A DNA stretch of 64,000 nucleotides from Stegostoma tigrinum (GCF_030684315.1 NC_081387.1:16399409-16463408), one strand, 5' to 3'. Positions 39,835 through 59,009 are shown, counted from the first letter of the stretch. The notes: generated by a model from the sequence alone, not told the origin. Made by a program: numbers and translations.

Positions 39835-39907
39835 ATGTGCAAGGAACCGAGCATTTTACAACTCGCCAGCGTTCTCCTCCTCGGCTATTACTTCATTTGC
39901 CTCTTCG
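39835..39907 (+). CDS. IgV inhibitory receptor, coding exon 1: signal peptide MCKEPSILQLASVLLLGYYFICLF
   Basis: ATG, hydrophobic stretch, strong donor G|gtaagt in phase 1; joins the IgV exon to give ...CLFAPGNSA|ISL, a plausible cleavage site. Confidence 0.8.
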
Positions 39908-40027
39908 GTAAGTAACGTTTCCCTCACTTGTATAAATGCAATTTTTGAGTGCCTCCTGCCTCTGGGCTTTAATGGGAGCTGGAGGCATGGAATGCATTTA
40001 CCGCTCCCTGACTTCCTACAAAAGAAG

Positions 40028-40219
40028 ATGAGATAACAAGGATGAACACTGCAGGCCAAGCAGCATCGGACGAGCAGGAAAACTGACTTTTCAGGTCGGG
40101 ACCCTTCTTCAGGAAACGTCAGCCTTCCTGCTCCTCTGATGCTGCTTGGCCTGACGTGTTCATCCAGCTCTACCCGTTGATACCTCAGATTCCCCAGCAT
40201 CTGCAGTTCCTACTATCTC
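40028..40219. mobile_element. Palindromic PLE pLTR element in intron 1
   Basis: Inverted arms; degenerate TSD cttcctacaaaagaa (40012-40026) / cttcctattaaagaa (40219-40233). Confidence 0.8.
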
Positions 40220-43200
40220 TTCCTATTAAAGAAACTGGTTTCTTGCTTTAAATCTTGTTGTTGGTTTAATCTAGCTCCTGTGAACGGGATGGGGCGGGGG
40301 GAGGGGCGTACAATTTCCCTTCAATTTGCTGGCGAAACTGGTCACTGAGCTGCATGCCTGCTGGAACCGTTTACGAGTGAATCAATCCATCTCCCAAATC
40401 TGTCAGCGTGATGAGTACCTGCTGTGCACGCTGTTATCTTGAGTCAGCTAGAAGTTTTGTTTTGCATTAGTTTGACGAGCGGTTCACTCAGCTAGGCTGA
40501 TCCTTCAGAGCTGAGGAGAGCTAGCAATCTCCCCTACCTCCTCCTGTCATGCTCCTGAGGATAGGTAACCAGAGTCGTTGGGCTTCTCTCAGCTGACAGC
40601 CCTGCCTCTGTTAGGAATGCAAATGCCCCTGAGTCAAGGAGGTGCTGAATTCAAAACTGGGTGCAGGACTTGGCAATGCTTCAGCTGACTCACATACTAA
40701 AACAGAATGAACACCCAACCCCAGACTACTTCCTCAATAGAGAAATTACTAATTAATATTTTCTTACTAGCTGAGAGATTTTCTGTCAATAGTCGACGCA
40801 CGACAAGAAGCATTTGTACAGCACCGCGGACAAAATGAAACAAGGGTCCCAAGGTGCCTCAAGGAAAATAAATTATATTCAAATAAAATTTGACCCTCAG
40901 CAACAGAGAAGATGTTGGGCCCAGGAGGTCAACTTTCAGAGGCATTTTAAAGAGAAACATGAAGTTAGGAGAGAATACGAATTAAGAGGGGATTTCCAGA
41001 GCTTGGGGACAACTGAAGCAATTGCCGAGTCATACACTCTTTTACAACCTGGAAAATGGCCCTTTACCCCACTGGATCCACGTCGGTTATCCAGTATCTA
41101 TCTACTTGTATCCCTTTTTCCAATGTGCAGCCTGTAGCCTCAATACCTAGCTCGTCTAAATACTTCTGAAAAAGCATTTAGTTTCACATTACAACTGGGA
41201 ATGCACATCAGGGCAGAATTGGAACAATAAAGCCCTTTTCCAGGATTGTAAGGCTGGAGGGCTTCATACAGATTGGAAAAGACAAGCTTATGGAAGGCTT
41301 GAAAATTAAAGTTGACTAGGAGATAGTATAAGTCAGAGAGTACCAGGGCAAACTGGACCTAATGTAAGACAAGACATATATGTTCGTGATGACTTAAACA
41401 TAGAGGGTAGAATACTGGAGACCAGTTAGTATAAACCCTTGGGGAGAAGAATCCCTCAAAACTCAAAACATTTTTATCTCTCGACCAATGTAGTTAAAGC
41501 AGATTGTCTGGATACTATCAGCTTGATATTAGAGACATCTTATGGCATGAAAGTTGATGCCGTATGTCTTACACTACAACAGAGGTCACAATCTTTAATG
41601 AAAGTAAAGACCTTTGGGACACCATGAGATCAAGTAACACGCGATACAAAAGGAAGCTTTTATTTATTTGTAGTTTGTGGACAAATTGGTTGTGATGTTT
41701 GCTACAGTTGCTATTTTTGAAATGTTGTCATTGTTGGTTTATAGATAAAATACCTTGGTAGACACAAAGGAAATAAAGGTACTTAGGTGTAAATTCAGAT
41801 GACTTTATTCTTTGATGAAAATGCAGGTGTTTAGTGGCTTTGCAAGAACAGAAGATATGGTTGAGGTTACATGAGTTCTGTTGCAGAACAGAAGAATCAT
41901 ATTCAGCTCGGAACATTAAATTTACATCTCTTCCAATGGCATTGTCAGAGCTGCTAACCATTTCACCCCCGTCCCTTCCCTTTATTCAGGCATATGAACT
42001 GGCATTTTCCCAGCCACCATCAGTTCTGAGGAAGGGTAACGGGACCCGAAACGTTCACTCTTTTTTTCCTCCATGGATGCTGCCAGACCTGCTGAGCTTT
42101 TTCAGCGACTTTGTTTGTGAACCATTTCCAGCACTTTGCGGTTTTAGATTTCCAGCGTCTGCAGTGTCTTGCTTTTGCCAAATTGAAGGGTGGTCTAATT
42201 GGTGCATTTAAAATGGTGAAAGAATTGATTAGGGTCGATGGAGAGAAACTATTTCCTCTGGTGGGTCAGTTCAGAACAAGAAGTGCACGCCGAAAATGGA
42301 GTTGGGCTTTTCAGTACTGGAATAGAGGCATGTTTTTGCACAGAAGTCAGCGGAGATCTGGTACACTGTATTGAATTTAAACAGAAAAAGGTTAGATAGA
42401 TGACACATGGAAAAACAGACAAGTGTGCCAAAATTGCTGAAAAATGACAGTGTGTAAGTGATAGACACTATTAATGTGTTTTAACACATCATAATAAAAC
42501 TTCCACCCCATGTTTGCACTTAAATGTTTAAATACAGTAAGTAGTCACTTTTATTAAGTGATTTAGCAACATCACAACATAAATGTAACACAGATAGCGG
42601 TTTGCTGCTGTCTAGTAGTCCCGCCACAGAATGAAATTTAAAAGTGCCAACAGCTGTGCTTTTGGATTCTGTTTTCTTTAATGATGAAGGGGTTCAATTG
42701 CCTAGAATATGCAGAAACTGTTCACACACATTGGTAATTCTGCAGTCAATGAGCCATAGATTTAAGAAAGACATGAATGGACCGAGAAAATAGTTCAGGA
42801 AGGACTTTATTTCTTATGATGACCAATTAACTTGTGGAAGTTACGTAATGTTGATGAAAGTAACATATATATGTTGAAAACGGAGCTGGGTTCACACACA
42901 AACAGCTGTTTGCCCTCCAGTTCCCCTTATTTTTGAGAACTGGTTTTTCACGTAAAAGGCCACTGAAATTGCCACAAAAGTGAAGCAGTGGTCATTATGC
43001 AGACAAAACATTTCAGATCAGGAGGAATTAAATGCAGGTATACATATATCCTTACCACCTCATTCTTTCCCAAAGTTCCAGGGTTTCCTGTGAGTTCAGG
43101 TTCATGGAATTTGGAGTATCCTAAAATTGTGGAAGGAGCCATGTAAATTCAAATGCTAACTTCTCATGTTGGAGGTAAAATCATCCATTTCTTTCAGCAA

Positions 43201-44109
43201 AGGGTGACAAGAGTTGGCAAATAACTAAGATCTACTGCAAATCATCACAAATGTCAGAGATACCTGGGTTGGATCACTTTGTTTTCAGACAGCTGAGGGG
43301 TGATCAAACTGGAATGTTTAACAAAGCAAGTGGGTTAGATAGTACAGACAGAGAAAATGCTGTGAAAACCAGAACATGAGCTTTAAATTAGGCTTAAGCT
43401 ATTTGGGAGTGAAATGATAAAGTGTACATTTTCACAAACTGGGTAGCAGAATTCTGGAATGCTCGCCCCTAAAATATTATGGGCATGGACCGATCAAGGT
43501 AGTCCAGAATGAAATGGGCAGATGTTGTATTCATTAAAAGATAGCAAGGAAATTCGATCAAGAACAATTGGCAGAGTTGAGATACAATCTGCTTTCAACA
43601 CAAGCATTAGTTATTTTATTTTCTAAATACACATGTGTCTCCACTCAAAGATACAACTGATACAGGAATATATTAATGGTGTCCATATTATACAATCAAC
43701 TGAAGCGCTGCTTTATAATTCTCATCCTGCGATTCATCTTAAAGATGATTCATGTATTTAATCAATTTACAGATCTGACGAACAAAGTACAGTAAGTTGT
43801 ATTTATGGGAAGATTCTCTCTGGTCTCTATCGTAGAATTACTTGAGAGTCCAGTCTTCAAAATATACCAAACCATGACTGTGAGAGGCAAATGAAAGGTT
43901 GGGGAATATTAGAATTTTGATTAAAATTGTGGTTGATCTAATTTTGATCTCAAATCTGCTTTCCTGCTACTCCTTGGGACCAAAATGTAAATAGTTGCAA
44001 CCAAACCTAATTTTATATTCCATTCTTACTTGTAATAAAGGCCAACGTTGCATTTGACTTCTTAGTCATTTGCTGCACCTGCATAATGACAGTTTTTTTT
44101 GTGTGATTT

Positions 44110-45420
44110 AATGTACCAAGACACCTTTGTACCATTACACTTTGCAATCGCTCTCTATTTAAATAGTAAATTGCTTTTTTATTCTTCTGATCAAAGTGTA
44201 AGAAGCAAAAAAAAAGCAGAAAACCAGGAACATTGGGAAATACCATAGTGCAAGAGCAGGAGGTAGCTATTAAGATGTGTCTCAGGAGCACAAATGCTGA
44301 TGTTTCGGGCCGAGACCCTTCATCCTCTCTGATGAAGGGTCTAGGCCCGAAACGTCAGCTTTCGTGCTCCTGACATGCTGCTTGGCCTGTTGTGTTCATC
44401 CAGCCCCACACTTTGTTATCTTGGATTCTCCAACATGTGCAGTTCCCATTATCTCTGAGCTATTGAGATGTAGTGTGATCATGGAATTTTCTTGGCAATC
44501 TTGCATCATATCCTTAAAACCTTTGGATAAATCTATTCGTTTCCAATTTGAAAATTGGGAATTGAGCTAGGATGTTCTTTTTTGTGCATGTGTGGATGAG
44601 AGGTCCAAACTTTGGTGGAGATAATGCAAGCCAATTGGTATTTTGGATGCATAGGCCATTCAGTTCCTCACGCTTCTTCCACCATTCAATTAAATCATGA
44701 CTTATCTGTGGTCTAACTTCATATACCTGCCTTTCAATCATCTCCCTTAATATTTTAGCTGAACAGAACAGCAGGGTTGGAAGCATAGTGACAATGTTAC
44801 TGAATCCAAGAAATCTAGAATCATAATTCAGAGGATATGAGTTTAAATCCAATTTGATCTAATTTCAAATTGAAGTTGGCAGTAGTCGGGTTGTTACTAA
44901 CTCATTAACCTCTTTCCTGGGCGACACAGTCTCCTAGCTATACAGGTTACTCTGAAATAGTCTCTGAAGCCATTCAGTTACATGCAATCTAAAAATGACC
45001 AGCATTTTCTACAGCCTATTGGTGGCAGGCAATAAATTCTCACAAGAACAAGGACAAATTCAAAAGATCCTGCCTCAAACTTAAAATCAGAGATGGTGCA
45101 GCATTTATAAAGGGAGAGAGAGAGAGTGAAGAAAATGTACAGCCATCTTATGGAAAGCATTCTAGAAATGTTTGATTTTAAATGAATACAACCCCTACGG
45201 TTCAGTGAGAGGCCATTTGACTCAGCAAGTCCGCACTGACCCTCCAAACAGAACTCCAAACAGACCCAGCCGCCACTCTATGCCTGTTACCCTGCATTTA
45301 GCATGGCCAATCCACCTCAGCTGCACATGTTCGGACTGTGGGAGGAAACTGGAGCAAAGTCAGACAGAGACAGGGAGAACACGCAAACTCCACACAAATG
45401 GGCACTCAGTTGCAGAATCA
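44110..45420 (+). repeat. Local segmental duplication, copy A (upstream of the IgV exon)
   Basis: Collinear with ~46278-47560 across several TE-fragment junctions (taaaacctttggataa, ggaagcatagtgac, ctgggcgacacagtctc, caggcaataaattctcacaaga). Confidence 0.9.
44279..44457. mobile_element. Palindromic PLE pLTR element with intact hammerhead core (44329-44356, +) and 14-bp TSD
   Basis: ctgatgaagggtctaggcccgaaacgtc; TSD agctattaagatgt (44265-44278) / agctattgagatgt (44458-44471). Confidence 0.88.
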
Positions 45421-45475
45421 AACTCGGGTTTCTGGCGGGGCAGCAGCGCTAACTACTGAGCCACCGCGCTGCCCG
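45200..45475 (-). mobile_element. tRNA-derived SINE
   Basis: gcagcagcgctaactactgagccaccgcgctgccc is the reverse-complemented SINE head. Confidence 0.8.
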
Positions 45476-45734
45476 TGTGTCTGCTTTTCTCGCTGAGTTA
45501 TGCGTTTTATTAACGTATACCACTGATTTTAAAAACATGTCAGAAGTTAGAGGAAGTCTGTTGGAACTTTTGTTTTTCCTGTGGAAAGTTACTTATATCG
45601 TCAAGTTGTGTACTTTCGGCGCACTCAGCTATCCCTCTCTCTATCTGGAGATTTTGCTGCGTAGACTGTAACTGATTGATGCGATGAGACTGAGATGCGG
45701 CTGGAAACTGATGTTGTGTGTGATCTTGTTACAG

Positions 45735-46130
45735 CCCCTGGAAACAGTGCTATTTCCCTGAGTGTCTCTCAGAGAGAAGTGAACGGGTCAGTGAGCCAGT
45801 CTGTCCGTCTCTCCGTCTCCTATTCCACACTCACACCCTCCTCCACTTTAGGGATCCTGTGGTATTTTTTGCCCGGAGACACTCCAATTGTGAGCCTGAT
45901 CCGGTCAAACTGCTCTTCAGATGCTGCCAGATGCTGTTATAACTGCTCAGATCACCAGATGTCAGCTCCTTCCCACCGACACCGAGTTGACGTCGACCCA
46001 GAGACGGGATCGTTGTGTTTGCGGGATTTACAGCCCAGCGACAGCGGCGTGTATGTGATACAAGTTTATGCAGACGGTGCGGACACAGCCGTTAAAGAGA
46101 ATGTGACTTTAACGGTCTGTAATGTGACAG
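45735..46130 (+). CDS. IgV inhibitory receptor, exon 2: V-set Ig domain (CD2/SLAM/CEACAM/HEPACAM/VSTM5-like, no canonical disulfide)
   Basis: Acceptor tcttgttacag|, donor ACAG|gtaaga, 396 nt, phase 1-1. VNGSVSQSVRLSVSY (A'/B), ILWYF (C strand Trp), RHRV..DPETGSLCLRDLQPSDSGVYVIQV (D-E-F), VTLTV (G). Confidence 0.93.
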
Positions 46131-46277
46131 GTAAGAGTTTACATTCTGCCCCTCCCTCTCGCTGGAGTTGGGGTGGAGTGTCGGGGGGCAGCGGGTGATA
46201 TGCAGGTGTGGATTGACTTAAAATGATTTAAAATTCTGAAAGGCTTTTGGACAGGAGGCATATGGCCAGGTTGGAAT

Positions 46278-46658
46278 TTACCTAGGCACCTCAGTACCAT
46301 CACACTTTGCAATCTTTTTTCTGTTTACATAATAATAAATTGCTTTTCTCGTCTTCTGACTAAAGTGGACAAAGCAAAACATGACGAATACAGAATAGCA
46401 GGAAATACTGCAAGAACAGAAGGAAGTCATTCCGACCTTCGAACTTGCCTCATGTCCATAAAACCTTTGGATAAGTCTATTCATTTCAGATTTGAAAATT
46501 GACAACTGATCCAGTCTCATAGTGTGTGCATGTGTACTTGTGTGTCACTGTGCGTGTGTGTATGTCTGTGTGTATTTGTATGTGTCCGTGTGTGTGTATG
46601 AGTGTCTGTGTGTACTTGAGTCTGTGTATTTTTGTGTGTCTGTGCGTGTGTAGGAAGC

Positions 46659-46698
<40 letters not shown>

Positions 46699-47560
46699 CG
46701 TGTGTGTGTATGAGACTTCCAAACCTTTTCTAAAACAACCCAATTGGTATTTCGGGTTCATAGGAACAGGAATATGCTGTTCAGCCCTCCAAGCCCATTC
46801 CATCACTCAATGACAGAACTGTGATCTGACTTCATCTACCTTTGGCCCATATCGCTTAATGCCATGGCTTAGCAAAACAGCTGTGTTCGGTGGGTTAGGA
46901 AGCATAGTGACTGTGTCACTGAATCCTAGAAATCTAGATTCAAAATTCAGAGGATGCAAGAGTAAATCCAATTTGATTTAATTTCAAGTCGGAGCTGGCA
47001 GTGATGACATTGAAGCAGTCTGATTGTTATTAACTCATAACTCCCTTACCTTTTGTCTGGGCGACACAGTCTCAAAGCTATCCAGGTTCCTCTGAAATAG
47101 CCTCTGAAACCGTGGAGTAATATGAAATCTCGAGCTACCAGCATTTTCTACAGGCAATCAGTGACAGGCAATAAATTCTCACAAGACAAGGACAAATTCA
47201 AATGATCCTGCCTCAACTTTGAAATATGTCAGAGATGGCGCAGGATTTATAAAGGGAGAAAGCAAAAAAAAAACAAAGAAAACACAGCCATATTTTGTAG
47301 AGGATTGCTGTAATGTTTGTGATTTTAAAAGGTTTCCTACATTTCAGAAAGAGACCATTGACCCATCGAATCTGTACCGGCCCTCCAAAGAGCATCCCAC
47401 CCAACTGCCCTATCTCACAATACCATATTTGCCATGGCTAGCCCACTCAGCCTACACATCTCTGGATGCTCTTGGCAAATTACCATGGCCAATCCACCTA
47501 ACCTGCACATCTCTGGACCATGGGAAGAAACTAGAGCACCCAGGGTAAACTCACACGGAC
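46278..47560 (+). repeat. Local segmental duplication, copy B (downstream of the IgV exon), containing a TG-rich microsatellite at ~46522-46710
   Basis: Collinear with ~44110-45420. Confidence 0.9.
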
Positions 47561-47684
47561 ATTTAAACACAAACAATTAAACTGGAGTCAGCCATTTGAT
47601 GACTATAGAGGGGCTGTAATTTACAAATGTCCAATTTACTAATGGTTTACTAATGACTCATTTTTACGTCATTCAGATCGTTAA

Positions 47685-47895
47685 AAACTGCTGATGCTGG
47701 AGTCAGAGACAACACAATGTAGAGCTGGAGGAACACAGCAGGCCAGGCAGCATCAGAGGAGCAGGAAAACTGAAGTTTCGGGTCAGAATTCTTCTTCAGA
47801 AATGGGGGTCCCTATCCGAAACACCAGCTTTCCTGCTCCCCTGATGCTGCCTGACCTGCTGTGTTCCTCCAGCTCCACACTGTGCTATCTCTGAC
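47685..47895. mobile_element. Palindromic PLE pLTR element (older)
   Basis: Inverted arms gtcagagacaacacaatgtagagctggaggaacacagcagg / cctgctgtgttcctccagctccacactgtgctatctctgac. Confidence 0.8.
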
Positions 47896-49064
47896 CCCTT
47901 CATATTGTGTTCCACTTGCATACAAATCAACTTGAAAACAGACACCAGAATGGAACCATTTGCCACCCAGGCACTGCCAGTATTTGGATGGAAATGGCAT
48001 ACAGGGATATGGGGAAAAGGCAGGAGATTGGCACGAGTTAATAGAACTGGGTGCTGAATGTCTTCCTTCTGTGCGGTAACAATTCTGTCATCAGGAGGGA
48101 TAACCCAATGTGACAACGGCTTGAGATGTCTTCACCAGTGGGTCCTTCCAGGGTTCCACAGGGCACATGCCCAGTGAAAGGCTAAGCAGATAGTGTTAAA
48201 CAACAGAATCTACGCTTGTCAGTCCAGGTTCAAAGTATAAGTGGTTTCCTCACATACACATGAACAGCTCAAAGCCTCGCTGGCGACCCAAACGCAGTCA
48301 CGACTTTTATACATAAAACACACTTACATACCACACTCTTGCTGGACGATCTACCTATCACTCGCCTCGGTACATGACACGTGTACCAAGTACAAACAAT
48401 GTTTAAGCTGGCTGTTCTGTATCTGAAATGCCTCACACAAAATGGAACTTTACTACAATTAAGTGGGATCAACTTCTTCGAAGGTAAATGCATGCTCCCT
48501 GAAAAAGGCTGCAAAGTTAACATATTTTCCTAACAGCATCACGTTGTTTAAGTGCGTAACTTTCTAATTAGCTATCCTAAATGGCATATGTCCTGATGGG
48601 TCAGAAGATGCAAGCCTGACCCCTGACCTCAGGCATTTGACCTGGGAGTTATCCCAATGAGTATCCTGGTTCCGTACAAAAGATTTGTTGGCTGATACTG
48701 ACAGGGTTGTTGAGTTATAACCTGAAACAATGGGGGGAAACTCTGTTATCTTTGTGCCCAATTACACTGTAACTCAACAAATCACAGATTCAGAGTCTCC
48801 TTTTCGTTCATTTCCGGTCAGTTTTTCAAAGGCAAAAAGGTCATTCTTTGCATCTTCCACCTCCTTCTTTCAGATATCCATCCTGTATGTTTATACAATG
48901 CTACCTCAGTAATTTTCTCCACTATGAACTACTTTAACCCTTTACATCCTTCCTTTTCCTTATAAAACTGCACTTTATTTTACTTTTTATTTCACCCTCA
49001 ATGCTGAATATACCGGTCTGCCATGCACAAATGTCCTGGGGGTAGCAGGCTCCCTCTTCAGGAG

Positions 49065-49659: not shown

Positions 49660-50230
49660 AACTGATGCAAGCACAGAGTCCGACACAATTCAGGGCAGAA
49701 CGCTCTTTACATGGGCGGCACTGCGAGATCCTTCAGATTAACCCACCTCGTTAGCAGACAGCAGTTTCACTCTATGCAAGTGCAGCTAGTCTGTGTTCAG
49801 AGGAAACAGGTCTATCCAGGGAGCTCATACGATGCACAGAACCTGAAGAAATTGCAAGTGCCGCCAGCGTTTGTTCCACTTCCTCCTTGATTGTAGGGCT
49901 GGCTCACTGGTAGCAGAGGGGCCCTCTCTGACGGTATCCATGAAGAATGTGGAAAGTACAGCAGAGGCTGGTGACAACAGCAATAATAGATACAGTGGTG
50001 ACAATAATACAATGGTGACAAGATGACACAATAGAACTGCAGAAAATGAGGTTCTGCTATTTGGACCATTCAAGCACTTGCAAATACAATATCCAGGACC
50101 ACTGTGTTGTGTTGTAGCCTGCACAACCTTGCCCAGCAAAGAAAGGAGGATTTTGCAGCTGGTGGGGTGGGATGCACTGCATGAGGAGGAAGGGGAAGGC
50201 AATGCTGCTGATGAGAGAGTAATCATTGTA
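49660..50230 (+). mobile_element. PIF/Harbinger transposase (HARBI1-like DDE) remnant
   Basis: In order: FHSMQVQLVC, YPGSSYDA, GWLTG, KMRFCYLD, VLCCSLHNLAQ, which match conserved Harbinger motifs; frameshifted. Confidence 0.75.
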
Positions 50231-51359
50231 GTATAGCACCAGAAGCCAGGGCAATGGAGCAACACAGCATACAGGCCTGAGGCAATTTTATCACCGCCAG
50301 GATTCAGGATGAGTGACGCACTCTTGGTCGCCAATACACTGTACATTATAATCCTGTGTTGCCTGGCAGGCTGTGCTTCCCTATTGGGCACAGATGATTT
50401 TGTTTCATTTCATTGCTCTGGTGCTGCATTAAGTTTTGCACTTTCACATTGAAATCTTTGACGTTGTAACCCTGTGGGTGAGTCAATCTGTAAACAAATG
50501 CATTTTGCTTGTGTAAAATGTGCTGGTTTAGAGCCAGCAGGAGTACCTGGGGAAACACTGCACACGCTGTGACCTCTGAACATTGCTGAAGCTCCTTGGC
50601 ACAAGCAAGCCCGCGTGCATGCTAAATCAGAAGCTGCACGCACTGTTAATTTGGCCGCGGTCCACTCAAGTCTCACTGACGCAGGCTCCAAATTGGGGAA
50701 ATCCCTTGCTAGTAACTCAGTCATGTAAGGCAGCAGCTGGACACACTGCCTCAGTAGCAGGTACTGCTGAAATAACAGCTTCAGAAGGATAATAATCAGA
50801 GGAAGGTAACTCATTGACAAAAGGATGCTCTAGTTTCATTCCTACATGTCGGTATAAGCAAAAATGTTGCTACTGATGCTGTGATAATGTAAATGGTGCA
50901 CCAAAGGCGTGCATTATCTAAGGCCGATTGAGAACAAAATGCAATGACCTCAAATAGATGCAATGTCTGCAGCAACCAGCATCCCAATTCAAGCTTGCTG
51001 ATTTGAGATTTGATTACACAAAGGCACAAAGGCTTGAAGATCGTGAAGCGAGATTCTCTGTTGCATTTGCGGCTCAGTCAATGCAAGCAGGAGGGGAGTT
51101 AAGGATAAACAAGGAACTATTTAAAGTGTCTAAATGGTAAGAAACAATAAGGGAATGAAGACACTTGTGGAAGTAATCTAAAACTCCGTAACAGTAGCTG
51201 TTCTGTAGGGCACAGAATCAGTCATCAGAATTGTCCTATATCCTTGCTGGGAGCTCACCACCATCTTCCCAAGGGGTGGGGGGGCAACTAGCAATGAGCA
51301 AGAAATGGTGGGCAGCCAGCGATGCCTGCACCCCACAGAATGAATGAATAAAAATTAAA

Positions 51360-52460
51360 TAAATTAACTTAAACGAGGGCAATTATGTAAGAGTAAGGGC
51401 AGAGTTGGCTGGACTGGGCTGGAAAAAGAGTTTAGCAGAAAAACTGGTTGACAAACACTGGCAGGTCCTGAAGAAAATAGTTTGTGACTTGCAGAAAATA
51501 TATATCCCAGCCAGTCATGAAGAATCTAGTAATATATAGTTTATCTAATAAATTTAGAATAGAATCAAATTGAAAGAAAATGCAAACAAAGATTAGTGGA
51601 AAACCAGAAAATTGGGAAAGTTTTAGAAACCAATAAACAATGTTCAGAAAAAGAAGAGAGAAAGGAGACCATGAGTGAAAACTAGCAAGTAGCATAAAAA
51701 CACACAGAGCTTCTTTAAATGTGTAAAAAGGAAGAGAAGACCCATTGCGAAAATAGGTCGCTTAGAGAATGAGGCTAGTAAAATAATCATAACAAGCCGG
51801 AAAATGGAAGAGCAGTTGAATAAATATTTTGCATCAGGCTTCACAGTGAAATATGCTCACCACTTTCTAATTTATTAAATATTCAAGAGGTTTATGTGGG
51901 GAGAAAATGAACACAGTCAGTATCACAAGAGAAAAAAAGTAAGAACTAATGGGGTTAAAACTGATAGGTTCCCAGCACCATCCTATGATTTTAACAGAAG
52001 TAGCTAACAAGGTGATGAATGTGCTGGTAATAATCGTCCAAGAATCTAAAGATTCTGGAAAAGCCCCAGAGGACTGGAAAACTTCCAAAGAAAACCCTTA
52101 TTCAAAAAGGGAGTCAAAAAAGTAACTTGAGGTGAGTAACCTTAATGTTTGACATGAGGAAAATGTTAGAGTCTATTATAAAGGATGTAGCAGTGGATCA
52201 TTTGGAAACACAGTTTAATTAAGCAAGGTCAGCACAACTTCATGAAGGTGAAATCATGCCTTCTAAATTTATTGCAGTTCTTTGTGAAGATAACAAGCAG
52301 AATAGATAAAGCAGAACTAGTAAATGTAATATATTTGGATTTTCAAAAGGTATTTGTTGAGATACTGCGCATCAGGCAACTTGATAAGTTAAAAGCCTAT
52401 GGTGTTAGAGGAGGTATGTTAGCATGGATAGAATCTTGGCTAACTAATCGAAGGCATTCA
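51360..52460 (+). mobile_element. Decayed CR1 ORF2 fragment
   Basis: SCLLNLLQFF...IYLDFQKVF...AWIESWLTNR. Confidence 0.85.
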
Positions 52461-52642
52461 TGTAAATTATGAACAGAGTAAGCCCCTGTGGAATGCCACT
52501 TCCTAACTTCCGCCATGCTCTCACTACATCCGCTCTTCCCTTACTGTTTTAAACTTGTCTCTTCAGAGTGTTAGTCTGAGGCTCTAGATTAATCCGGTGA
52601 TACTACCAGTAAACCATTAAATCACCAAGTGTTTTGTTACAG

Positions 52643-52789
52643 ATGGTGAAAGTACGACCCCAGCTGTTTCAACAACAAATCAATCTTCGACTGAAAATAC
52701 AGAAATGTATATCATTACCTCTGCTGCTATGTGTTTCTTCATTGTTCTCATCTGTTTCATCTACTTGTTGGTAACAAAGAAACACAGAG
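52643..52789 (+). CDS. IgV inhibitory receptor, exon 3: S/T-rich stalk + transmembrane helix + stop-transfer
   Basis: Acceptor gttttgttacag|, donor AG|gtacgt, 147 nt, phase 1-1: (D)GESTTPAVSTTNQSSTENTEMYIITSAAMCFFIVLICFIYLLVTKKHR. Confidence 0.88.
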
Positions 52790-53974
52790 GTACGTTACCA
52801 TTCTCCATGATCAGACCATATACCGGTGAATGAGCAGTTGCAATCAGGAAAGGTGAAAAAGCCTGACAATGACTGCAGTTAATGTGATAGATTATCATTT
52901 TATCAAAGAGTGATGGGCTGAGATGTAGAAATTCAAATTGTCCAGCTACCCAATCTTCACTTCTATAGAGTTCAATATTAAGGAACATTGGGGAAGACAT
53001 ATACAGGATAGTTTGATAAAAACCGAAAGAACTGCGGATGCAGTAAATCAGGAACAAAAACAAAGTTGCTGGAAAAGCTCAGCAAGTCTGGCATCATCTG
53101 CGAAGGGAAAAAACAGAGTTAACATTTCAGGCCCAGTGACCCTTCCTCAGAACTGGTTGATATCATGAGTTTTATACAAGTTACCACAGTTAAACGTACA
53201 GCCTATAGCCAAGTGACTATCTGGCTGCTATTGTCGAAATCTCCTCAGTCCATGGGCTGGGAAATGAAATTCACTCAATTCTTGTACTGCCCTCAATCTC
53301 CTGATTCCCATTTCCGACTGAATTATCTACCATGTGTTCTTCTGCATACCCTTCTCATATAGCTTACTGAATGGGCTGAATCAAATTTTCCCTTTCTGAA
53401 AGGAGCAAAGGTTGGGATGATGATCTGAGAGCAGATTAACGTTGAATCATTAATGACTGTACATAATACATGTAAACAGATCCTCGATATTTCAGCTACC
53501 ATTGCAGTTTGTAGTTAGTTTTATTTTACTGATCAATACACTTCATTATGAGCTGGTGATCAAATTAAGATTTAACTATGGGTTATCTGAATCTCACTAT
53601 TTGTTATATCTATTTAAATAATTCATGCACAATGGATATTGGAAAATAGTTAATAGTGGTTATTTCTTGACTTTGCCACAAATCTGACCATTTGACCGGA
53701 CTTTGCTTCTGTTCTGCACAGATTTTTAATAATTAACTGTATGTGTTTGGTGTGAGATTTTAATTAACCCTTCAGGTAATGGTCTCCATTGATGAAGAAA
53801 ATAAAATAAATTGAGTGACAAAACGCAAAACTGGAGCTTGCATTGACAAATCGAAAAGCATTGGCAAGCTGCCTTTTTTATACAATGGTGCCTTTATCAA
53901 GTTTTGAGGTGCATTACATCTTGTCATTCACACACAAGTCAAACAATTTCATATCTTGGAATATTTTAATTCAG

Positions 53975-54054
53975 GTTGTCGTCTGCAACAGGATTCTGTT
54001 GTCATGGAAACATCTATTCAGTCGATTGAGGGAATGAGGCAAGGCTTGACTGAG
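53975..54054 (+). CDS. IgV inhibitory receptor, exon 4: membrane-proximal cytoplasmic segment
   Basis: Acceptor ttttaattcag|, donor GAG|gtaaga, 80 nt, phase 1-0: (G)CRLQQDSVVMETSIQSIEGMRQGLTE. Confidence 0.75.
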
Positions 54055-54214
54055 GTAAGAGTGGAGTTGATTATTATGAGTTTAGATTCTTACTCAAAGA
54101 GCATTAACATCTATTTTGCAAAGTGCACTTCTTTTTTTATCAGGCTGACAGACCATTGAAAAAATGATGGGATTGGAACAACACTAGTTTTATATCCCAG
54201 TGATTTTAATTTCT

Positions 54215-54880
54215 ATTGATTTGGTTTGATTTATTGTTGTCATATGTATCGAGATACAGCGAAAAGTGTTGTTTTGCATGTTCTGCAGACAGATCGCTCC
54301 ATACTAAAAGTGCAGTGCCAAGAAGGTGCAGAGAGAAAGAGATCAGAATTAACATTTGAAAGTTTTAGCAATCAGCATTTGAAAGAATTAACAATTTGAA
54401 AATGGTGAGGAAGAAGCTATTTTTTGAATCTGTTCATATACATTTTCAGACTTTTATCTGTTGTGCCCAACCATTGCGGGTGGAGGAGAGTATAACTGGG
54501 GTGGAAGGGGTCTTCGATTATGTTGGTTGTTTTCCCAAAGCAGCAGGACACATCGATGGAGTCAATGGATAGAAAGCTGGTTTGTGTCATGGACGGGACT
54601 GTGTTCTGTAGAGCCTGGCAGAATTGGGCAGACCAATTGCCATAGGATGCTGTGATGCATCCAGATAGGCCACTGTCCATAGTGCATCTCTCAGAACGGG
54701 GAGGCATCTTTGCGGACATGCTGAATTTCCTCAGTCTCCAGAGGAGGTAATTGTTGTGCTTTCTTGACCATTGTGTCAACGTGGGGTGGGCCAGGACAGA
54801 TTGTTGGTGATCATCACTCCCAGGAACCTGACGCTCTTAACCATCTCCTTCTCAGCACCATTGATGTAGACAGCATGTCA
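54215..54880 (-). mobile_element. Rex1/Babar-type LINE 3' fragment
   Basis: Minus ORF LRKFSMSAKM...SGLSGCITASYGNWSAQ...IIEDPFHPSYTLL; similar 3' end at ~33860-34045 (+). Confidence 0.7.
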
Positions 54881-55049
54881 ATATCTGATGCTGTGACAAA
54901 TAATGAAAGTATTGGGATGGCAGATGAATTGCCAGGGTATGTTGCATCAGTCAACACTGTACAAGGAGCATCCTAGAAGCTGTAAATCAGGAAATGGAAG
55001 ACAAAAGAAGCTCAAGAAACTCACAAGCAGACTATCTGGATGGTTTTGG

Positions 55050-56520
55050 TGAGCAAATTGATAAAGCTGTAGGCTGATAGAATCCCAAGTCCTGATGGAC
55101 CACATGTTTTCATCTTAAAAGAAATGGCTAGTGAAATAGTTGAAGCATTTGTGTTAATTTTTGTGAAATTTCTATAGACTTGAAGAGGTTCCTATTGGAT
55201 AGGAAAATATTGTTCATTTCCTGCAAAGGTATGCAAGAGAGAAAGTAGGAAACTTCTTCGACCCTTGAATTCTTTAAAGTTTGAAGTTTGCATCACGTAT
55301 AGACAGAATGGTTAAGAAGGTATTTAGCACACTTGCCTTCATTGCTCAGAAGGTGGGACATCATGTTAACGTTATACAGGACCTTGAAGAGGACTCTTCT
55401 GGCGTTCTGTGTCCAGTTCGGGTCGCCCTGCTATATGAAGGATATTATTAAGCTGCAAAGGGTTCAGAAGAGATTTACCAGGATGTTGCCAGTAACGGAG
55501 GGTTTGAGTTACAAAGAGATACTGGATAGGCCGGGACTGTTTTCACTGGAGTACAGGAGGTTGAGGGGTGACCTTATAGAGGTCTGTAAAATCATGAAGT
55601 GTACAGATAAAGTGAATGGCAGATGTCTTTTTCCTAGTGTGTGACTAGGGGGCATATTTTTAAGGTGAGAGGAGAAATTTTAAAAAAAGATGTGAGGCCA
55701 ATTTTTTTTACAGAGAGAGTGGCTCATGTGTGGAATAAACTTCCAGAGAAAGTGATAGATGTGGGTAGAGTCACAGTGTTTAAAGACATTTAGATAAGTA
55801 CATGAATAAGAAGTGTTTGGAATGATATAGGCTAGGTGCAGACAAGTGGGACTAGAGATAACAAAGTGTGAAGCTGGATGAACGCAGCAGGCCAATCAGA
55901 GGAGCACAAAAGCTGATGTTTCGGGTCTAGACCCTTCATCAGAAAAGGAGAAGAGGGAGAGAGTTCTGAAATAAATATAGAGGGGGAGGTGGATCGAAGA
56001 CGGATAGAAGTGAAGATAGGTGGAGAGGAGACAGACAAGTTAAAGAGTCGGGGATGGAGCCAGTAGAGGTGAATGTCGTTGGGCTAGTTTAGTTTGGCGG
56101 ATTATGGTCGGCATGTACTGGTTGGACAGAAGGGTCTGTTTCCATGCCGCTTGCTCCTATGACTTTATGTTAAAACAGCACACTTCGATAAGTTCAAGGT
56201 AAGTAAGCAGAGCCAACATGGTTTTGTGAGAGGGAGTTCATGTTCAGCCAATTTATTAGAGTGCTTTCAGGAAGTATAATGTGCTTTGGATGATGGGAAA
56301 TTGGTGGGCATAATTTAATTAGATTTACAGAAAATATTTAGTAAAGTGCAACATCAAAGGTTATTGTAGTTAAAGTAAAAAGCTGATGGTGTAGGGTATA
56401 ATATATTGACACAGTGAGATGATTAGTTGATTAACAAGAAATGGAGCAGACATGAATTCGGTTGGCAAGATGTAATGAACGGTGTGCCACAAGGGATAAA
56501 CACTGTGACCTCAATGTTTA
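55050..56520 (+). mobile_element. Nested CR1 fragments with a PLE 3' end inserted at ~55855-56080 (-)
   Basis: LYRTL..LAFCVQFGSP...QKRFTRMLP; PLE arm with HHR-like ctgatgaagggtctagacccgaaacatc on the minus strand. Confidence 0.8.
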
Positions 56521-56589
56521 AAATTTATCTCGGAGGAAGCGTGGGTGGCAATTGTAACTCTGTTCAGCCTCAGTCAGAGGGCTGCGTTA

Positions 56590-57200
56590 CAGAGTAATCA
56601 GCCGTGGTTGCAGTGGGGAGCCCTTGCCCTCAGTAACCAGCCTTGCAAGGCACCTGCACCCGCAAACTCTGCAAGTACTTGAGAGTGTAGGGGTGATGGC
56701 AGCTGCCAGGGCAGAGGGCACACAGCAAGTGGAACCCATGAGCATCTGCACATTGGTGAAATGGATGCCCTTCCTATTGATGAACATCATTGTGTTGGGA
56801 TGTGGGCATCTCTGCTCTGGTGCACAATGAGTGTGCCTGGAGATGTTCCCACCAGGAGTCCAAACTGGAAGTCCAGAGGACAAACTGATGAGCTGGAGTC
56901 GCTTGGAATTTCAAGTTGGGAATTCTTGGTGTCCAGTTTATTCATAACATGTTGCAGGATAGAAAGCTACGGGTGAATGAGGCAAGATGTACAGTTAATG
57001 AGGGTGAAAATGAGCACTAGCCCCAGTTAATAGGCATCTCATCACTCCCAAGCAAGAATGTTGTCCCACCCGAGCAGAAGCTCAGTTGCAAAATGCAATG
57101 AGTTGCTCTTGACATTGGGAAAGGCCTCCCCTGCCTTCTCATGCCATTCTGTCAGATTGCCTGCCATTGGCCACATCATCATACAGGCCCCTTTAAGGTT
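56590..57200 (-). mobile_element. PIF/Harbinger transposase remnant
   Basis: Minus strand: FINRKGIHFTNVQM, PGSCH, and GWLL..GSPLQPRLIT (compare GWLLGD.GYPL..WLMTP). Confidence 0.7.
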
Positions 57201-58014
57201 CTGCCCAATGAGTAAAGCCAAGCTCAAGTAGAACACAAAAGCCATCTGTCTTTTCCCTTCTTCACCACTTCAATATTCCTCTGATAGTGACAATGCTGTT
57301 TGACATCAGTTTAATGATGTGAAAGAGTGCAACTTCTCATTGAACCTCGGAAAGCACAGTTCCCACTCTGTGCTGTGAAAATCAGTGTAAAAGGGACCCT
57401 CTGTTTGAATTACAAGCTGAACCAGACATGATATGCTTAGATGTCACACATCAACTACAGTGAAGCAGAGTTGCATAATGTTAAACTAACTAATTGATAA
57501 AATTGGATTGTTTGATCATAACATAAATGAAAATTAATTATTAAACATGATTATCCCTCCTTTAATAATAAATAGTTAGCTTGTCTTACAGTGGTTTTGG
57601 TTGAGACGGATATTGATCAGGCTGCGCCTGGTCTTTTTCGCAATACTATAGTTCTTTGGGGTCTTATACATTAATCTAAGTGCGCAGGGGTAGGATCTTT
57701 GTTTTAGGGTTCCATCCAAAAGTGGCACCTCTTTATTTAACAATTTCTAAACATATAAAATAAATTTTTAAAAATCTAATGTGGAATAATATCAATATAA
57801 CCATTATATCATGGCTGTCATTGAAAATGGTGAAGGAAAACTGGACAGCTCAGAGCTGGGATATTAGCATGTTTTGAAAAAGGGTGGGGAAGTTTTACCC
57901 AGTAGCCTGCGTAATATTTATCTGAACCAAAATCAATGAAAAACAGGATGCTGAGATCAATTGGGCTTTCACGAATGAGATGGATTGAGTTTTGTTGGCT
58001 TAAGGTATCAAAGG

Positions 58015-58590
58015 ATATATTATACAGGGTCTTGGTGAGACCACCCCTGGGGTATTGCATGTTAGTTTTGGCTTCCCTATGTTCCTGAGGATAGACTTGC
58101 TAAAGAGAGAGTGCAACAAATGTTTGCAAGGCTAATACCACAGATGGCAGTACTGTCACATGAGGAGAGATAAGTTTGCCTGGGTTTCTATTCTCCAGGG
58201 ATCACAACTACAAGAGGGGATCTGGTTGAAATGTATAAAATTCAAGCAGGGTTGGAACGACTAGATGCAAGGAGGACGTTTCCCCTGGATGGAGAGTTGA
58301 GAACCAGTGGGTCACCATCTCAGGGTATGGGAGAGTAATTAAGACTAAAATGAGGACACTTCTACTCTTTCAGAAGATGGCCAACCCACAGAAGGCTGTG
58401 GAGGCTGGATCACTGAGCGTATTCAAGAAAGAGGTCGATACATTTTCAGTTATTATAAGCGTCAGAGTGTTTGAAGAGGCAGAGAGAATATGGCATTGAG
58501 GTAAAGGATGAGCTGTGGCCATAATGAATGGCAGATAAGGAGTCAAGGGCTGAATGGCCGACTGCTGCCTATAGTTTCAATGTTTCCATA
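58015..58590 (+). mobile_element. Old CR1 3' fragment
   Basis: ttatacagggtcttggtgagacca... (LYRVLVRP) through gggctgaatggccgactgctgcc. Confidence 0.75.
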
Positions 58591-58862
58591 TGGAGCAGGA
58601 GCACGTGGACAGAGTTGACATGCAGATTAATTATGGTCTTACTGAATGGTGGATCAGGCCCAGGGCTGGATGGCCTTAGGCTGTTCCTCACAGTAGGGTA
58701 CCAAAGGGTGACTTTTACTGCACCCACTGGTTGGATAAATTTCCTTGTCGGGAGAGCTGAAGCAGTTGTCGCTGTCAATGTTTGTACATTTTCATCTGTT
58801 TTCTTCCAAGGCCTTTATGATTTCACACATCCTGAAAGCTGTGCCTTTTGCTTTCTGTGCAG

Positions 58863-59009
58863 GGCCAGGATACGTTAACAAACAGTGAACTCACATATTC
58901 CCTTCTGCAGTGGTCCAAGGACAGGAACCCACAGGCTTCAGGAGCTGACACACAAGAGACAGGTCTGCAGACAGTATATGCTTTTCCACAGATGGTGAAC
59001 TGCAGGTGA
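58863..59009 (+). CDS. IgV inhibitory receptor, last coding exon: ITIM + ITSM-like tail
   Basis: Acceptor gccttttgctttctgtgcag|, phase 0: GQDTLTNSELTYSLLQWSKDRNPQASGADTQETGLQTVYAFPQMVNCR*. Possible polyA signal ATTAAA at 59717-59722. Confidence 0.82.
   Translation, partial: GQDTLTNSELTYSLLQWSKDRNPQASGADTQETGLQTVYAFPQMVNCR

What the first reader, a model, noticed from the sequence alone, without database searches (positions are those of the whole stretch)
39835..59009. Hand-assembled single-IgV inhibitory receptor with PD-1-like exon plan but a CD2/CEACAM-type domain
Seen: five GT-AG exons (73, 396, 147, 80, 147 nt; phases 1,1,1,0) splice into an uninterrupted 280-aa protein: signal peptide, IgV, S/T stalk, TM, then LTYSLL and TVYAFP with the tyrosines 27 aa apart. 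Only the IgV exon and exon 4 appear in the ORF track. Established: LxYxxL is a canonical ITIM; PDCD1 has the same five-exon SP/IgV/stalk-TM/short/ITIM+ITSM layout, and CEACAM1 has a similarly spaced tandem tyrosine tail. Inference: a checkpoint-like receptor of a cartilaginous fish that I cannot assign to a named gene. It is not simply PD-1, because the IgV lacks the B- and F-strand cysteines.
Basis: partly seen in the sequence, partly recalled or inferred. Interest (0 to 1): 0.85.

Follow-up and report, generated by a model that had tools for sequence, protein, structure and literature searches.

The report
Shark single-IgV inhibitory (ITIM) receptor gene
This is a real five-exon zebra-shark gene for a one-domain cell-surface receptor with a conserved inhibitory tail; databases already predict it but give it no name, and it belongs to an unnamed receptor family found in sharks, rays, birds and reptiles.

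Summary
Five GT-AG exons (39835-39907, 45735-46130, 52643-52789, 53975-54054, 58863-59009; phases 1,1,1,0) encode a signal peptide, a V-set domain, an S/T stalk plus TM, a short linker, and a tail with LTYSLL and TVYAFP whose tyrosines are 27 aa apart.

It is not a new gene. Exons 1-4 and most of exon 5 equal RefSeq "uncharacterized protein LOC125446602" of Stegostoma tigrinum.

The gene is the orectolobiform orthologue of an elasmobranch-wide family. Both tail tyrosines are invariant in the 13 aligned tails. Three species also have partners with an Arg in the TM segment, and their IgV is 90-98% identical to the same-species ITIM gene. That pattern indicates paired receptors evolving in concert.

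Clear relatives, almost all "uncharacterized", occur in birds (including chicken), turtles, alligator, amphibians and coelacanth.

- **Not PD-1:** the canonical cysteines are absent and no PD-1 similarity was found.
- **CEACAM membership not established:** sequence similarity covers only the D-F strands, the predicted fold is a full-size V-set, and relatives exist in fowl, which are reported to lack CEACAM genes.

RNA reads and synteny could not be tested. Inhibitory signalling through SHP phosphatases is inferred. It is a new member of a known kind and of moderate interest.

The parts
39835..39907 (+). Exon 1: start codon and the first 24 residues of the signal peptide (MCKEPSILQLASVLLLGYYFICLF). 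Phase-1 donor TCG|GTAAGT.
   Evidence: Identical to residues 1-24 of RefSeq P0182 and P0001. tblastn hit.
45735..46130 (+). Exon 2: end of the leader plus the V-set domain (131 aa). V27 and I108 replace the canonical B/F cysteines, and W42, R83, D102 and Y106 are kept. The family-specific Cys pair is C59 (45911-45913) and C70 (45944-45946), within NCS...NCS. Stegostoma has four extra Cys (66, 67, 94, 128).
   Evidence: Pfam V-set E 2.3e-10. 100% identical to P0001. AlphaFold model pLDDT 88.5. Residue coordinates. Family conservation.
52643..52789 (+). Exon 3: S/T-rich stalk, an uncharged TM segment (about 52705-52776, MYIITSAAMCFFIVLICFIYLLVT) and a KKHR stop-transfer. It is phase 1 to 1 and 147 nt long, so skipping it keeps the reading frame.
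   Evidence: Present in RefSeq X1 (P0182) and skipped in X2 (P0001). Orthologues hit it by tblastn.
53975..54054 (+). Exon 4: an 80-nt juxtamembrane cytoplasmic exon (CRLQQDSVVMETSIQSIEGMRQGLTE), phase 1 in and phase 0 out.
   Evidence: Present in both RefSeq isoforms. Orthologue tblastn hits.
58863..59009 (+). Exon 5: the cytoplasmic tail with the ITIM LTYSLL (58890-58907), a second tyrosine motif TVYAFP (58971-58988) and the stop codon.
   Evidence: Aligned with 12 orthologue C-termini, both Tyr are invariant.
58954..58971 (+). Weak internal donor (CAG|GTCTGC, exon end at 58962). Both RefSeq isoforms use it to splice to an exon beyond the window, which removes the second tyrosine motif.
   Evidence: P0182 and P0001 match exon 5 for 33 aa and then diverge. 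The alternative end is not encoded anywhere in the window. The donor matches 6 of 9 consensus positions, against 7-8 for the other donors.

Best explanation
The locus is the zebra-shark (Stegostoma tigrinum) gene LOC125446602. It encodes the inhibitory member of an elasmobranch-wide family of single-IgV type I membrane receptors.

The ectodomain is one V-set domain that lacks the B-F disulfide. It carries instead a conserved Cys pair across the C'-C'' hairpin. An O-glycosylatable stalk and an uncharged TM segment follow.

The tail carries a canonical ITIM ([LIVT]xYxx[LI]) and a second invariant tyrosine 22-27 residues downstream.

Inferred mechanism: ligand binding by the V domain leads to Src-family phosphorylation of the two tyrosines. 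The tandem SH2 domains of SHP-1 or SHP-2 then dock on them and dampen activating signals.

Three other shark species have sister genes with almost the same V domain, an Arg in the TM segment and no ITIM. These presumably signal through an acidic-TM ITAM adaptor, which would make this a paired inhibitory/activating system.

Skipping the in-frame stalk/TM exon would give a secreted form.

Shown: the gene structure, its conservation, the motifs and the paired paralogues. Inferred: expression, the ligand, phosphatase recruitment and adaptor pairing.
For: - **Gene model:** exact exons and phases. Exons 1-4 are identical to RefSeq X1.
- **Domain:** Pfam V-set above its cut-off. Confident V-set model, pLDDT 88.5.
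- **Orthologues:** found in Hemiscyllium, Chiloscyllium (two species), Scyliorhinus (two species), Mustelus, Carcharodon, Cetorhinus, Heterodontus and Heptranchias, and in the rays Pristis, Mobula, Narcine and Rhinoraja. All have the same layout.
- **Tail:** both tyrosines are invariant in the 13 aligned tails, and the first always fits the ITIM consensus. The two rays checked only by motif scan, Mobula and Rhinoraja, show the same pair of motifs in duplicate.
- **Orthology:** in the IgV tree the window gene groups with the other orectolobiform genes (support 94/91).
- **Paired partners:** Arg-in-TM genes P0006, P0007 and P0012 are 98%, 92% and 90% identical in IgV to the same-species ITIM gene. 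Congeneric orthologues are only 83-88% identical. The partners cluster by species in the tree (100/98 and 99/92; weak, 85/25, for Hemiscyllium).
- **Secreted form:** TM-exon-skipped isoforms are annotated in four species (P0001, P0003, P0181, P0005).
- **Single V domain:** no second Ig exon lies in the window.
Against: - There is no direct RNA evidence here.
- Both RefSeq isoforms end differently and lack the second tyrosine.
- The second motif has P, A, V or S at +3, so it is not a canonical ITIM or ITSM. Its SH2 partner is uncertain.
- The Stegostoma V domain sits on a long branch (0.5, against 0.03-0.09 for its orectolobiform relatives) and has four extra cysteines. This could mean relaxed constraint.
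- No Arg-TM partner was found for Stegostoma itself.
- Nothing shows immune-cell expression, so an adhesion role is possible.
Confidence: 0.65

Rival explanations
1. It is a true CEACAM-family gene: a single-N-domain, CEACAM1-like inhibitory receptor, with the Arg-TM genes as its CEACAM3-like counterparts.
For: - The V domain lacks the disulfide, and the leader is split in phase 1 so that its last part lies in the N exon, as described for CEACAM genes.
- Both tyrosine motifs lie in one last exon behind a phase-0 intron, as in the published opossum and Xenopus CEACAM tails (EEVSYASVNF...ETIYSEIKKK). Shark consensus is LTYSLLQW...ETIYAF.
- The tyrosine spacing of 22-27 compares with 24 in opossum CEACAM1.
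- Among disulfide-less V domains in the PDB, CEACAMs are the best profile hits (CEACAM6 1.5e-8, CEACAM1 1.1e-7).
- NCBI names stingray, newt and frog relatives 'CEACAM3-like'.
- CEACAMs are known paired receptors that undergo gene conversion.
Against: - The PDB similarity covers only about 40 residues (strands D-F), and JAML scores better.
- No CEACAM appears in the top 50 structural neighbours.
- There are no IgC2 exons.
- A conserved C'-C'' Cys pair is absent from the published human CEACAM1 and Xenopus N domains.
- Clear relatives exist in chicken, duck, quail and guineafowl. Zimmermann and Kammerer report that these birds have no intact CEACAM genes (PMC13278318).
- None of the 120 best profile hits carries a CEACAM name.
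- Synteny with LIPE, BCL3, TOMM40 or CXCL17 could not be tested.
Confidence: 0.2
2. It is a HEPACAM-like homophilic adhesion molecule of non-immune tissues. The tyrosines would then serve endocytosis or adaptor binding (YxxP) rather than immune inhibition.
For: - Several sources name family members 'hepatocyte cell adhesion molecule-like', 'HEPACAM family member 2', 'HECAM' or 'HECA2'.
- The second motif is YxxP in orectolobiform sharks and in two rays (Pristis, Mobula). From general knowledge, YxxP is a Crk/Abl-type SH2 motif.
- No expression data tie the gene to leukocytes.
Against: - HEPACAM proteins have V plus C2 domains and long proline-rich tails (from memory, not tested). This gene has one V domain and a 75-residue tail.
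- An invariant ITIM, together with charged-TM partners whose V domains evolve in concert, is the signature of immune paired receptors, not of adhesion molecules.
Confidence: 0.1
3. In Stegostoma the gene is under relaxed constraint and on its way to becoming a pseudogene. The family would then be functional elsewhere but not in this species.
For: - A long terminal branch, with only 59-64% IgV identity even to other orectolobiforms, which are 84-88% identical to each other.
- Four lineage-specific cysteines, including one that replaces the conserved Tyr or His at the end of the G strand.
- The RefSeq transcripts skip the second tyrosine motif.
Against: - All five exons are open and all splice sites are canonical.
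- The ITIM and the second Tyr are intact, and W42, R83, D102 and Y106 are kept.
- Fast V-domain evolution is expected for paired receptors.
Confidence: 0.05

Closest known systems
CEACAM1 with its CEACAM3-type partners (paired inhibitory/activating CEACAMs)
   Same: The N-terminal V domain lacks the B-F disulfide. The leader is split in phase 1 with its end in the V exon. An ITIM and a second Tyr lie about 24-27 residues apart in one last exon behind a phase-0 intron. An 'ETIY' stretch precedes the second Tyr. There are inhibitory and activating genes whose V exons stay alike within a species. An exon whose skipping changes the product is present.
   Different: There are no IgC2 domains. The V domain is longer (131 aa against about 108), with a long disulfide-bridged C'-C'' hairpin. 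The second motif ends in P, A, V or S, not V or I. Activation appears to run through an Arg in the TM segment rather than a cytoplasmic ITAM. Relatives are present in fowl, which are reported to lack CEACAM genes. Synteny is untested.
Unnamed sauropsid/amphibian V-set family (for example chicken LOC771657, duck LOC110351392, turtle, alligator, caecilian and salamander genes; coelacanth LOC106701837)
   Same: The V-domain signature is shared: (Q)xxVNGTVGQSVLLPVSY...W...NCS-x(9-11)-C...Y+GR..fPeNgSLLLrdLQlsDSGvY, with no B-F cysteines. Profile E-values range from 1e-40 to 1e-120. The tails carry two tyrosine motifs.
   Different: They form a separate clade (99/98). Many have two to six tandem V domains. 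Their tails read TxYxx[IV]...TxYxx[IV] with about 20-residue spacing. None has been characterised.
HEPACAM / HEPACAM2
   Same: Several annotation pipelines pick this name for family members. The V domain lacks the canonical cysteines, and I recall a similar GTVG-S-LL-V...NGSLLL-DLQ pattern from memory (untested).
   Different: HEPACAM has V plus C2 domains and a long proline-rich tail without an ITIM, and it is an adhesion molecule. No HEPACAM sequence was available here for comparison.
PD-1 (PDCD1)
   Same: A five-exon layout of leader, V, stalk-TM, short exon and tail. One V domain. An ITIM followed by a second Tyr motif.
   Different: PD-1 has the canonical C23-C104 pair. No PD-1 appears among the 60 listed sequence hits or the 50 listed structural hits. 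The chondrichthyan PD-1 candidates in the literature are linked to muc4/tnk2/rtp and lack conserved ITIM motifs (PMC11599192). The family's motifs are absent from that paper's supplement.
Other paired IgSF receptor families of non-mammals (skate MDIR, teleost NITR, LITR and NILT, chicken CHIR)
   Same: The logic is the same: ITIM-bearing and charged-TM members share similar ectodomains and form multigene clusters.
   Different: As far as I recall, those families use canonical disulfide-bonded V or C2 domains. No sequence relation was seen in any search here.

Membership tests
Pfam V-set (PF07686) | HMM score above the gathering threshold | tested here: met
   41.1 bits against a cut-off of 26, E 2.3e-10, covering profile positions 2-108 of 109. 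All 18 family members tested also match.
ITIM-bearing inhibitory receptor | Type I membrane protein with an uncharged TM segment and a cytoplasmic (S/I/V/L)xYxx(I/V/L) | tested here: met
   The TM segment MYIITSAAMCFFIVLICFIYLLVT has no charged residue. LTYSLL lies 43 residues after KKHR. The ITIM tyrosine is invariant in the 13 aligned species tails.
ITIM-bearing inhibitory receptor | Phosphotyrosine-dependent recruitment of SHP-1, SHP-2 or SHIP | not testable with these tools
   This needs phosphopeptide pull-down or reporter assays.
ITSM (TxYxx[V/I]) | Thr at -2 and Val or Ile at +3 of the second tyrosine | tested here: not met
   TVYAFP has Pro at +3. Orthologues read TIYAFP, TIYAFA, TIYALA, AIYALA, VIYTAP, IIYSAP, IVYTVS and VVYAVS. 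Only Heptranchias (NIYAFV) has V at +3, and it lacks the Thr.
Paired (inhibitory/activating) receptor family | Sister genes with near-identical ectodomains, a charged TM residue and no ITIM | tested here: met
   This is met for the family. P0006, P0007 and P0012 have an Arg in the TM segment and 98%, 92% and 90% IgV identity to the same-species ITIM gene. It is not shown for Stegostoma itself, and no such exon lies in the window.
CEACAM | N-terminal V domain without the B-F disulfide, encoded by an exon that also carries the end of the leader | tested here: met
   V27 and I108 occupy the Cys positions. The leader is split in phase 1 at 39907/45735. The criterion is as described in PMC13278318.
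CEACAM | Significant sequence similarity to bona fide CEACAM N domains over the whole domain | tested here: inconclusive
   Profile hits to CEACAM6, CEACAM1, CEACAM7 and CEACAM8 reach E 1.5e-8 to 5e-6 but cover only about 40 residues. JAML, B7-H3 and DSCAM score similarly. No CEACAM is in the VIA top 50.
CEACAM | Location in the conserved CEA locus (LIPE, BCL3, TOMM40, CD79A, CXCL17 neighbourhood) | not testable with these tools
CEACAM | Taxonomic distribution consistent with CEACAM genes | tested here: not met
   Family members are present in chicken, duck, goose, quail, guineafowl and pheasant. PMC13278318 reports no intact CEACAM genes in Galloanserae.
PD-1 / CD28 family | V domain with the canonical Cys pair and detectable PD-1 or CD28 similarity | tested here: not met
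   The cysteines are absent. No PD-1 or CD28-family chain is among the 60 listed PDB profile hits or the 50 listed VIA hits. The family's motifs are not in the CD28-family survey supplement.
CD2/SLAM family | A V domain without a disulfide, followed by a C2 domain, with TxYxx[V/I] tails for SLAM members | tested here: not met
   There is no C2 exon and no canonical ITSM. CD48 and CD58 are only weak hits (E 2e-4; Z 13.3 at rank 40).
HEPACAM family | V plus C2 ectodomain, long proline-rich tail, sequence similarity to HEPACAM or HEPACAM2 | not tested
   The only support is the names given by sources. No HEPACAM reference sequence could be obtained by reference. The architecture (single V domain, short tail) does not fit.

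The most novel reading that the evidence does not exclude
The gene represents an ancient, so far undescribed gnathostome receptor family. Its V-set domain has a C'-C'' disulfide in place of the B-F one. The family is retained in sharks, rays, coelacanth, amphibians, turtles, crocodilians and birds, and it was not seen in mammals or teleosts. In elasmobranchs it forms a paired inhibitory/activating system whose V domains are homogenised within species. That would make it an early-vertebrate analogue of the CEACAM1/CEACAM3 or SIRP arms-race systems, with an unknown and possibly pathogen-derived ligand.
Probability: 0.4. Interest if true: 0.6.

Novelty: new member of a known kind. Interest (0 to 1): 0.42.

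Why it matters
ITIM receptors with charged-TM partners are central to immune regulation in mammals, but their deep history is patchy. This locus gives a clean, conserved example in cartilaginous fish. Both tail tyrosines are invariant in every shark and ray tail examined, which implies long-standing selection on the signalling tail. The within-species homogenisation of the V domains suggests ligand-driven co-evolution.

The wider family is abundant in birds and reptiles, including chicken and duck, yet almost every member is labelled 'uncharacterized'. A functional study in sharks or in chicken would therefore annotate hundreds of database entries.

There is also a practical point. The RefSeq models for Stegostoma probably have a non-conserved 3' end that hides the second tyrosine motif.

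Tried and rejected
- **RNA evidence.** The look-up of sequencing runs listed five holder runs, none recorded as RNA. No junction could therefore be tested.
- **Synteny.** The scan's earlier notes on this genome hold nothing on the same piece.
- **Direct PDB sequence search with the exon alone.** Only weak generic V-set hits came back.
- **Foldseek and VIA structure searches.** These returned generic V-set neighbours (VCBP3, PD-L1, TIGIT, CAR, VSIG4) and do not discriminate between families.
- **ESM Atlas.** The nearest clusters are a mix of 2B4-like, VSIG10L2, TIGIT and CEACAM, which gives a lead only.
- **Literature.** No paper mentions LOC125446602, its orthologue LOC ids or chicken LOC771657. 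Searches for shark ITIM paired receptors and HEPACAM-like genes found nothing relevant.
- **PD-1 orthology.** Rejected, as set out in the membership test.
- **A second Ig exon or a paralogue in the window.** None was found.
- **The alternative RefSeq terminal exon.** It is not in the window.

Full report
**1. The observation**

The five exons exist exactly as described. Their coordinates are 39835-39907, 45735-46130, 52643-52789, 53975-54054 and 58863-59009, giving sizes of 73, 396, 147, 80 and 147 nt. Each internal exon is preceded by a pyrimidine-rich tract and AG, and each of the four donors is GT. The donors match 7-8 of 9 consensus positions.

The split codons at the three phase-1 junctions read Ala, Asp and Gly, and the last intron is phase 0. 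The sizes sum to 843 nt, which is 280 codons plus TGA.

Exon 5 translates to GQDTLTNSELTYSLLQWSKDRNPQASGADTQETGLQTVYAFPQMVNCR*. Its tyrosines are at positions 12 and 39, so they are 27 apart. It was checked exon by exon, by reference.

**2. The gene is real but already predicted**

A search with the ORF that holds the IgV exon returned [quoted passage not shown]. That protein is 100% identical over the exon. A second search returned isoform X1 (P0182, 298 aa). The window is therefore zebra-shark DNA.

The translations of exons 1-4 are exact substrings of X1, and X2 lacks exon 3.

Both RefSeq isoforms follow exon 5 for 33 residues. They then leave it at a weak internal donor (CAG|GTCTGC, exon end 58962, 6 of 9 consensus positions) for an exon that is not in the window. 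This replaces the second tyrosine motif with an unrelated end.

It is therefore the conserved product.

**3. Conservation**

Proteins of the same layout occur in many elasmobranchs:

- **Sharks:** Hemiscyllium ocellatum, Chiloscyllium punctatum and C. plagiosum, Scyliorhinus canicula and S. torazame, Mustelus asterias, Carcharodon carcharias, Cetorhinus maximus, Heterodontus francisci and Heptranchias perlo.
- **Rays:** Pristis, Mobula, Narcine and Rhinoraja.

Shark proteins hit all five window exons by tblastn, and every exon except the leader is matched by several species. Only one Ig exon exists in the 64-kb window.

In the 13 aligned tails both tyrosines are invariant. The first motif always fits the ITIM consensus:

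- LTYSLL, LTYSML, LTYSFL and LVYSLL
- LTYCLI and VTYSYL
- TVYSTL and ITYCLL

The second tyrosine follows 22-27 residues later. Its −1 residue is I or V and its +1 residue is A, S or T, but +3 is P, A, V or S. It is therefore not a canonical ITSM. Mobula and Rhinoraja, checked only by motif scan, carry the same pair of motifs in duplicate.

**4. The V domain**

Pfam V-set is matched above its threshold. An AlphaFold model built with the family alignment is confident (pLDDT 88.5) and shows the full A-A'-B-C-C'-C''-D-E-F-G strand set.

V27 and I108 occupy the usual Cys positions. W42, R83, D102 and Y106 are kept.

Two cysteines, C59 and C70, each within an NCS sequon, are invariant or nearly so across the family. 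They lie opposite each other on the predicted C' (50-61) and C'' (68-76) hairpin. From that geometry I infer a cross-strand disulfide.

Stegostoma has four extra cysteines, at positions 66, 67, 94 and 128.

Structural searches give generic full-size V-sets. VCBP3 scores Z 17.1, followed by VSIG4, B7-H3, TCR delta and PVR in the VIA search, and PD-L1, TIGIT and CAR rank high by Foldseek. CD58 appears at rank 40, and no CEACAM is in the top 50.

By profile-to-sequence search of the PDB the best hits are:

| Hit | E-value |
|---|---|
| JAML | 2.8e-11 |
| CEACAM6 | 1.5e-8 |
| B7-H3 | 2.9e-8 |
| CEACAM1 | 1.1e-7 |
| CD48 | 2e-4 |

For the CEACAM hits, and for the JAML alignment that was printed, the match covers only the D-E-F stretch (y.gR…fPeNgSLLLrdLq..DsGvY).

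**5. Paired receptors**

Three species have a second gene with the same V domain, a different stalk and a TM segment containing Arg (…LLVRVSTL…, …LLLRGSIVGG…). These genes have a short tail without an ITIM (P0006, P0007, P0012).

| Comparison | IgV identity |
|---|---|
| C. punctatum ITIM vs Arg-TM gene | 98% |
| Hemiscyllium ITIM vs Arg-TM gene | 92% |
| S. canicula ITIM vs Arg-TM gene | 90% |
| Two Chiloscyllium ITIM orthologues | 88% |
| Two Scyliorhinus ITIM orthologues | 83% |

In a maximum-likelihood tree the Arg-TM genes pair with the ITIM gene of their own species. Support is 100/98 for C. punctatum, 99/92 for S. canicula, and weak (85/25) for Hemiscyllium. This is the pattern of paired receptors kept alike by gene conversion or by repeated duplication.

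The window gene groups with the other orectolobiform ITIM genes (94/91), so it is their orthologue. It sits on a long branch (0.5), which points to fast change in the V domain.

**6. The wider family**

A profile of the family finds more than 100 proteins at E values from 1e-40 to 1e-120. The hosts include:

- **Birds of all major clades.** Chicken LOC771657, ducks, goose, quail, guineafowl, ostrich, emu, kiwi, pigeon, gulls, cormorants, eagles and owls.
- **Reptiles.** Turtles and alligator.
- **Amphibians.** A caecilian and salamanders.

Coelacanth, gecko and frog relatives came from the single-sequence HMMER search.

Almost all are "uncharacterized". A few are called HEPACAM-like, and a few ray, newt and frog members are called CEACAM3-like or CEACAM5-like.

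They share the V-domain signature, including the Cys pair. Many have tails with two TxYxx[IV] motifs.

The tree has two well-supported halves, each at 99/98. One holds the tetrapods. The other holds coelacanth plus two elasmobranch clades, one of which contains the neighbouring Stegostoma gene LOC125446604.

No mammalian or teleost protein was among the 120 best hits. However, only proteins of 152-485 aa were candidates, and only the 8000 candidates sharing most words with the query were scored. Absence is therefore not shown. Teleost multi-V proteins share only the D-F stretch.

**7. Comparison with known families**

*PD-1.* The exon plan is generic. The cysteines are missing and no sequence or fold search returns PD-1. 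A 2024 survey places chondrichthyan PD-1 candidates next to muc4/tnk2/rtp and notes that they lack the conserved ITIM. Its supplement contains none of this family's motifs.

*CEACAM.* Published material shows several shared features: a leader/N-exon split, an ITIM plus a second Tyr in one last exon behind a phase-0 intron, and tails such as EEVSYASVNF…ETIYSEIKKK. These resemble LTYSLLQW…ETIYAF.

Published knowledge of cartilaginous-fish CEACAMs rests on little-skate ESTs. It remains possible that this family is what those ESTs represent.

Against membership, there are no C2 domains and the V domain is larger and differently bridged. In addition, relatives abound in Galloanserae, where Zimmermann and Kammerer find no intact CEACAM genes. 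Synteny, the criterion those authors rely on, could not be tested.

I therefore file the gene as [quoted passage not shown].

**8. Mechanism**

The features shown are a type I membrane protein with one V domain, five N-glycan sequons in the V domain, an S/T stalk, an uncharged TM segment, an invariant ITIM and a second invariant Tyr.

From established ITIM biology I infer phosphorylation by Src-family kinases and bidentate docking of SHP-1 or SHP-2. This would oppose signals from the Arg-TM partner, which would act through an acidic-TM ITAM adaptor.

Exon 3 is 147 nt and phase 1 to 1, so skipping it keeps the frame. Such isoforms are annotated in four species (P0001, P0003, P0181, P0005), which suggests a secreted decoy form.

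Exon 4 is 80 nt, so skipping it would shift the frame and remove the motifs. This parallels the 53-bp exon of CEACAM1 but has not been observed here.

**9. Limits**

- There are no RNA reads.
- None of the five holder runs is recorded as RNA.
- HEPACAM and CEACAM reference sequences could not be brought in by reference, so no joint phylogeny was made.

**10. Verdict**

The gene is a conserved ITIM receptor of an unnamed but widespread V-set family. It is a new member of a known kind (paired IgSF receptors) and of moderate interest.

Noticed in passing
window 2-4546: A 30-bp minisatellite (consensus AACAGGCAGCCCTGAGGCAGGGAGAGTGGG) with about 152 copies and 80% matches. It is GC-rich (63-65%) with strong G and A strand bias, and it produces long spurious ORFs on both strands.
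   Followed up: partly
window 44500-44990 and 46444-47130: The IgV exon is flanked on both sides by copies of the same dispersed repeat in direct orientation. Three collinear blocks are 81-84% identical at a spacing of about 2.0-2.1 kb. The scan also noted this as s1-881753. It could be a substrate for exon-restricted exchange between paired-receptor genes, or it could simply be transposon copies.
   Followed up: partly
window 58885-58912: The ITIM codons (…TATTCCCTTCTGCAG|TGG) form a pyrimidine tract followed by CAG, which is a potential in-frame alternative acceptor inside exon 5 (scan note s1-881803). No data on its use.
   Followed up: no
window 8593-9948 (-), 10441-12483 (+), 24087-25625 (-), 55333-55793 (+), 60087-60537 (+): Reverse-transcriptase and endonuclease ORF fragments of LINE-type retroelements fill much of the window, with the recurring 'RVQRRFTRMLPG…LFSLE.RRLRGDLIE' C-terminal motif. 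No second cellular gene was seen in the 64 kb.
   Followed up: no
window 9956-10085: A run of 130 N, either an assembly gap or masking. Left as it is.
   Followed up: no
window 46520-46810: A degenerate (TG/CA)n-type microsatellite just downstream of the IgV exon. It gives His-Thr and Cys-Val repeat ORFs.
   Followed up: no
window 1-57700, including 30525-30760: No Rfam family reaches its gathering score anywhere in 1-57700. That includes the stretch the scan noted as a hammerhead-like hairpin (s1-881804).
   Followed up: partly
   Followed up: no
related proteins P0171 and P0173 (Rissa tridactyla) and P0209 (Platysternon): Some bird and turtle family members are fused in annotation to neighbouring genes (TMLHE in the kittiwake, 'Aprataxin and PNK-like factor' in a turtle). 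These are probably gene-model errors. The TMLHE case hints at the family's genomic neighbourhood in birds.
   Followed up: no
related proteins P0168 (Mobula hypostoma) and P0198 (Rhinoraja longicauda): In two ray lineages the ITIM plus second-Tyr module is duplicated in tandem in the tail (ITYTLL…IIYSAP…LMYSLL…IIYSAP, and TTYCLL…VVYAVS…TTYCLL…IVYAVS).
   Followed up: no
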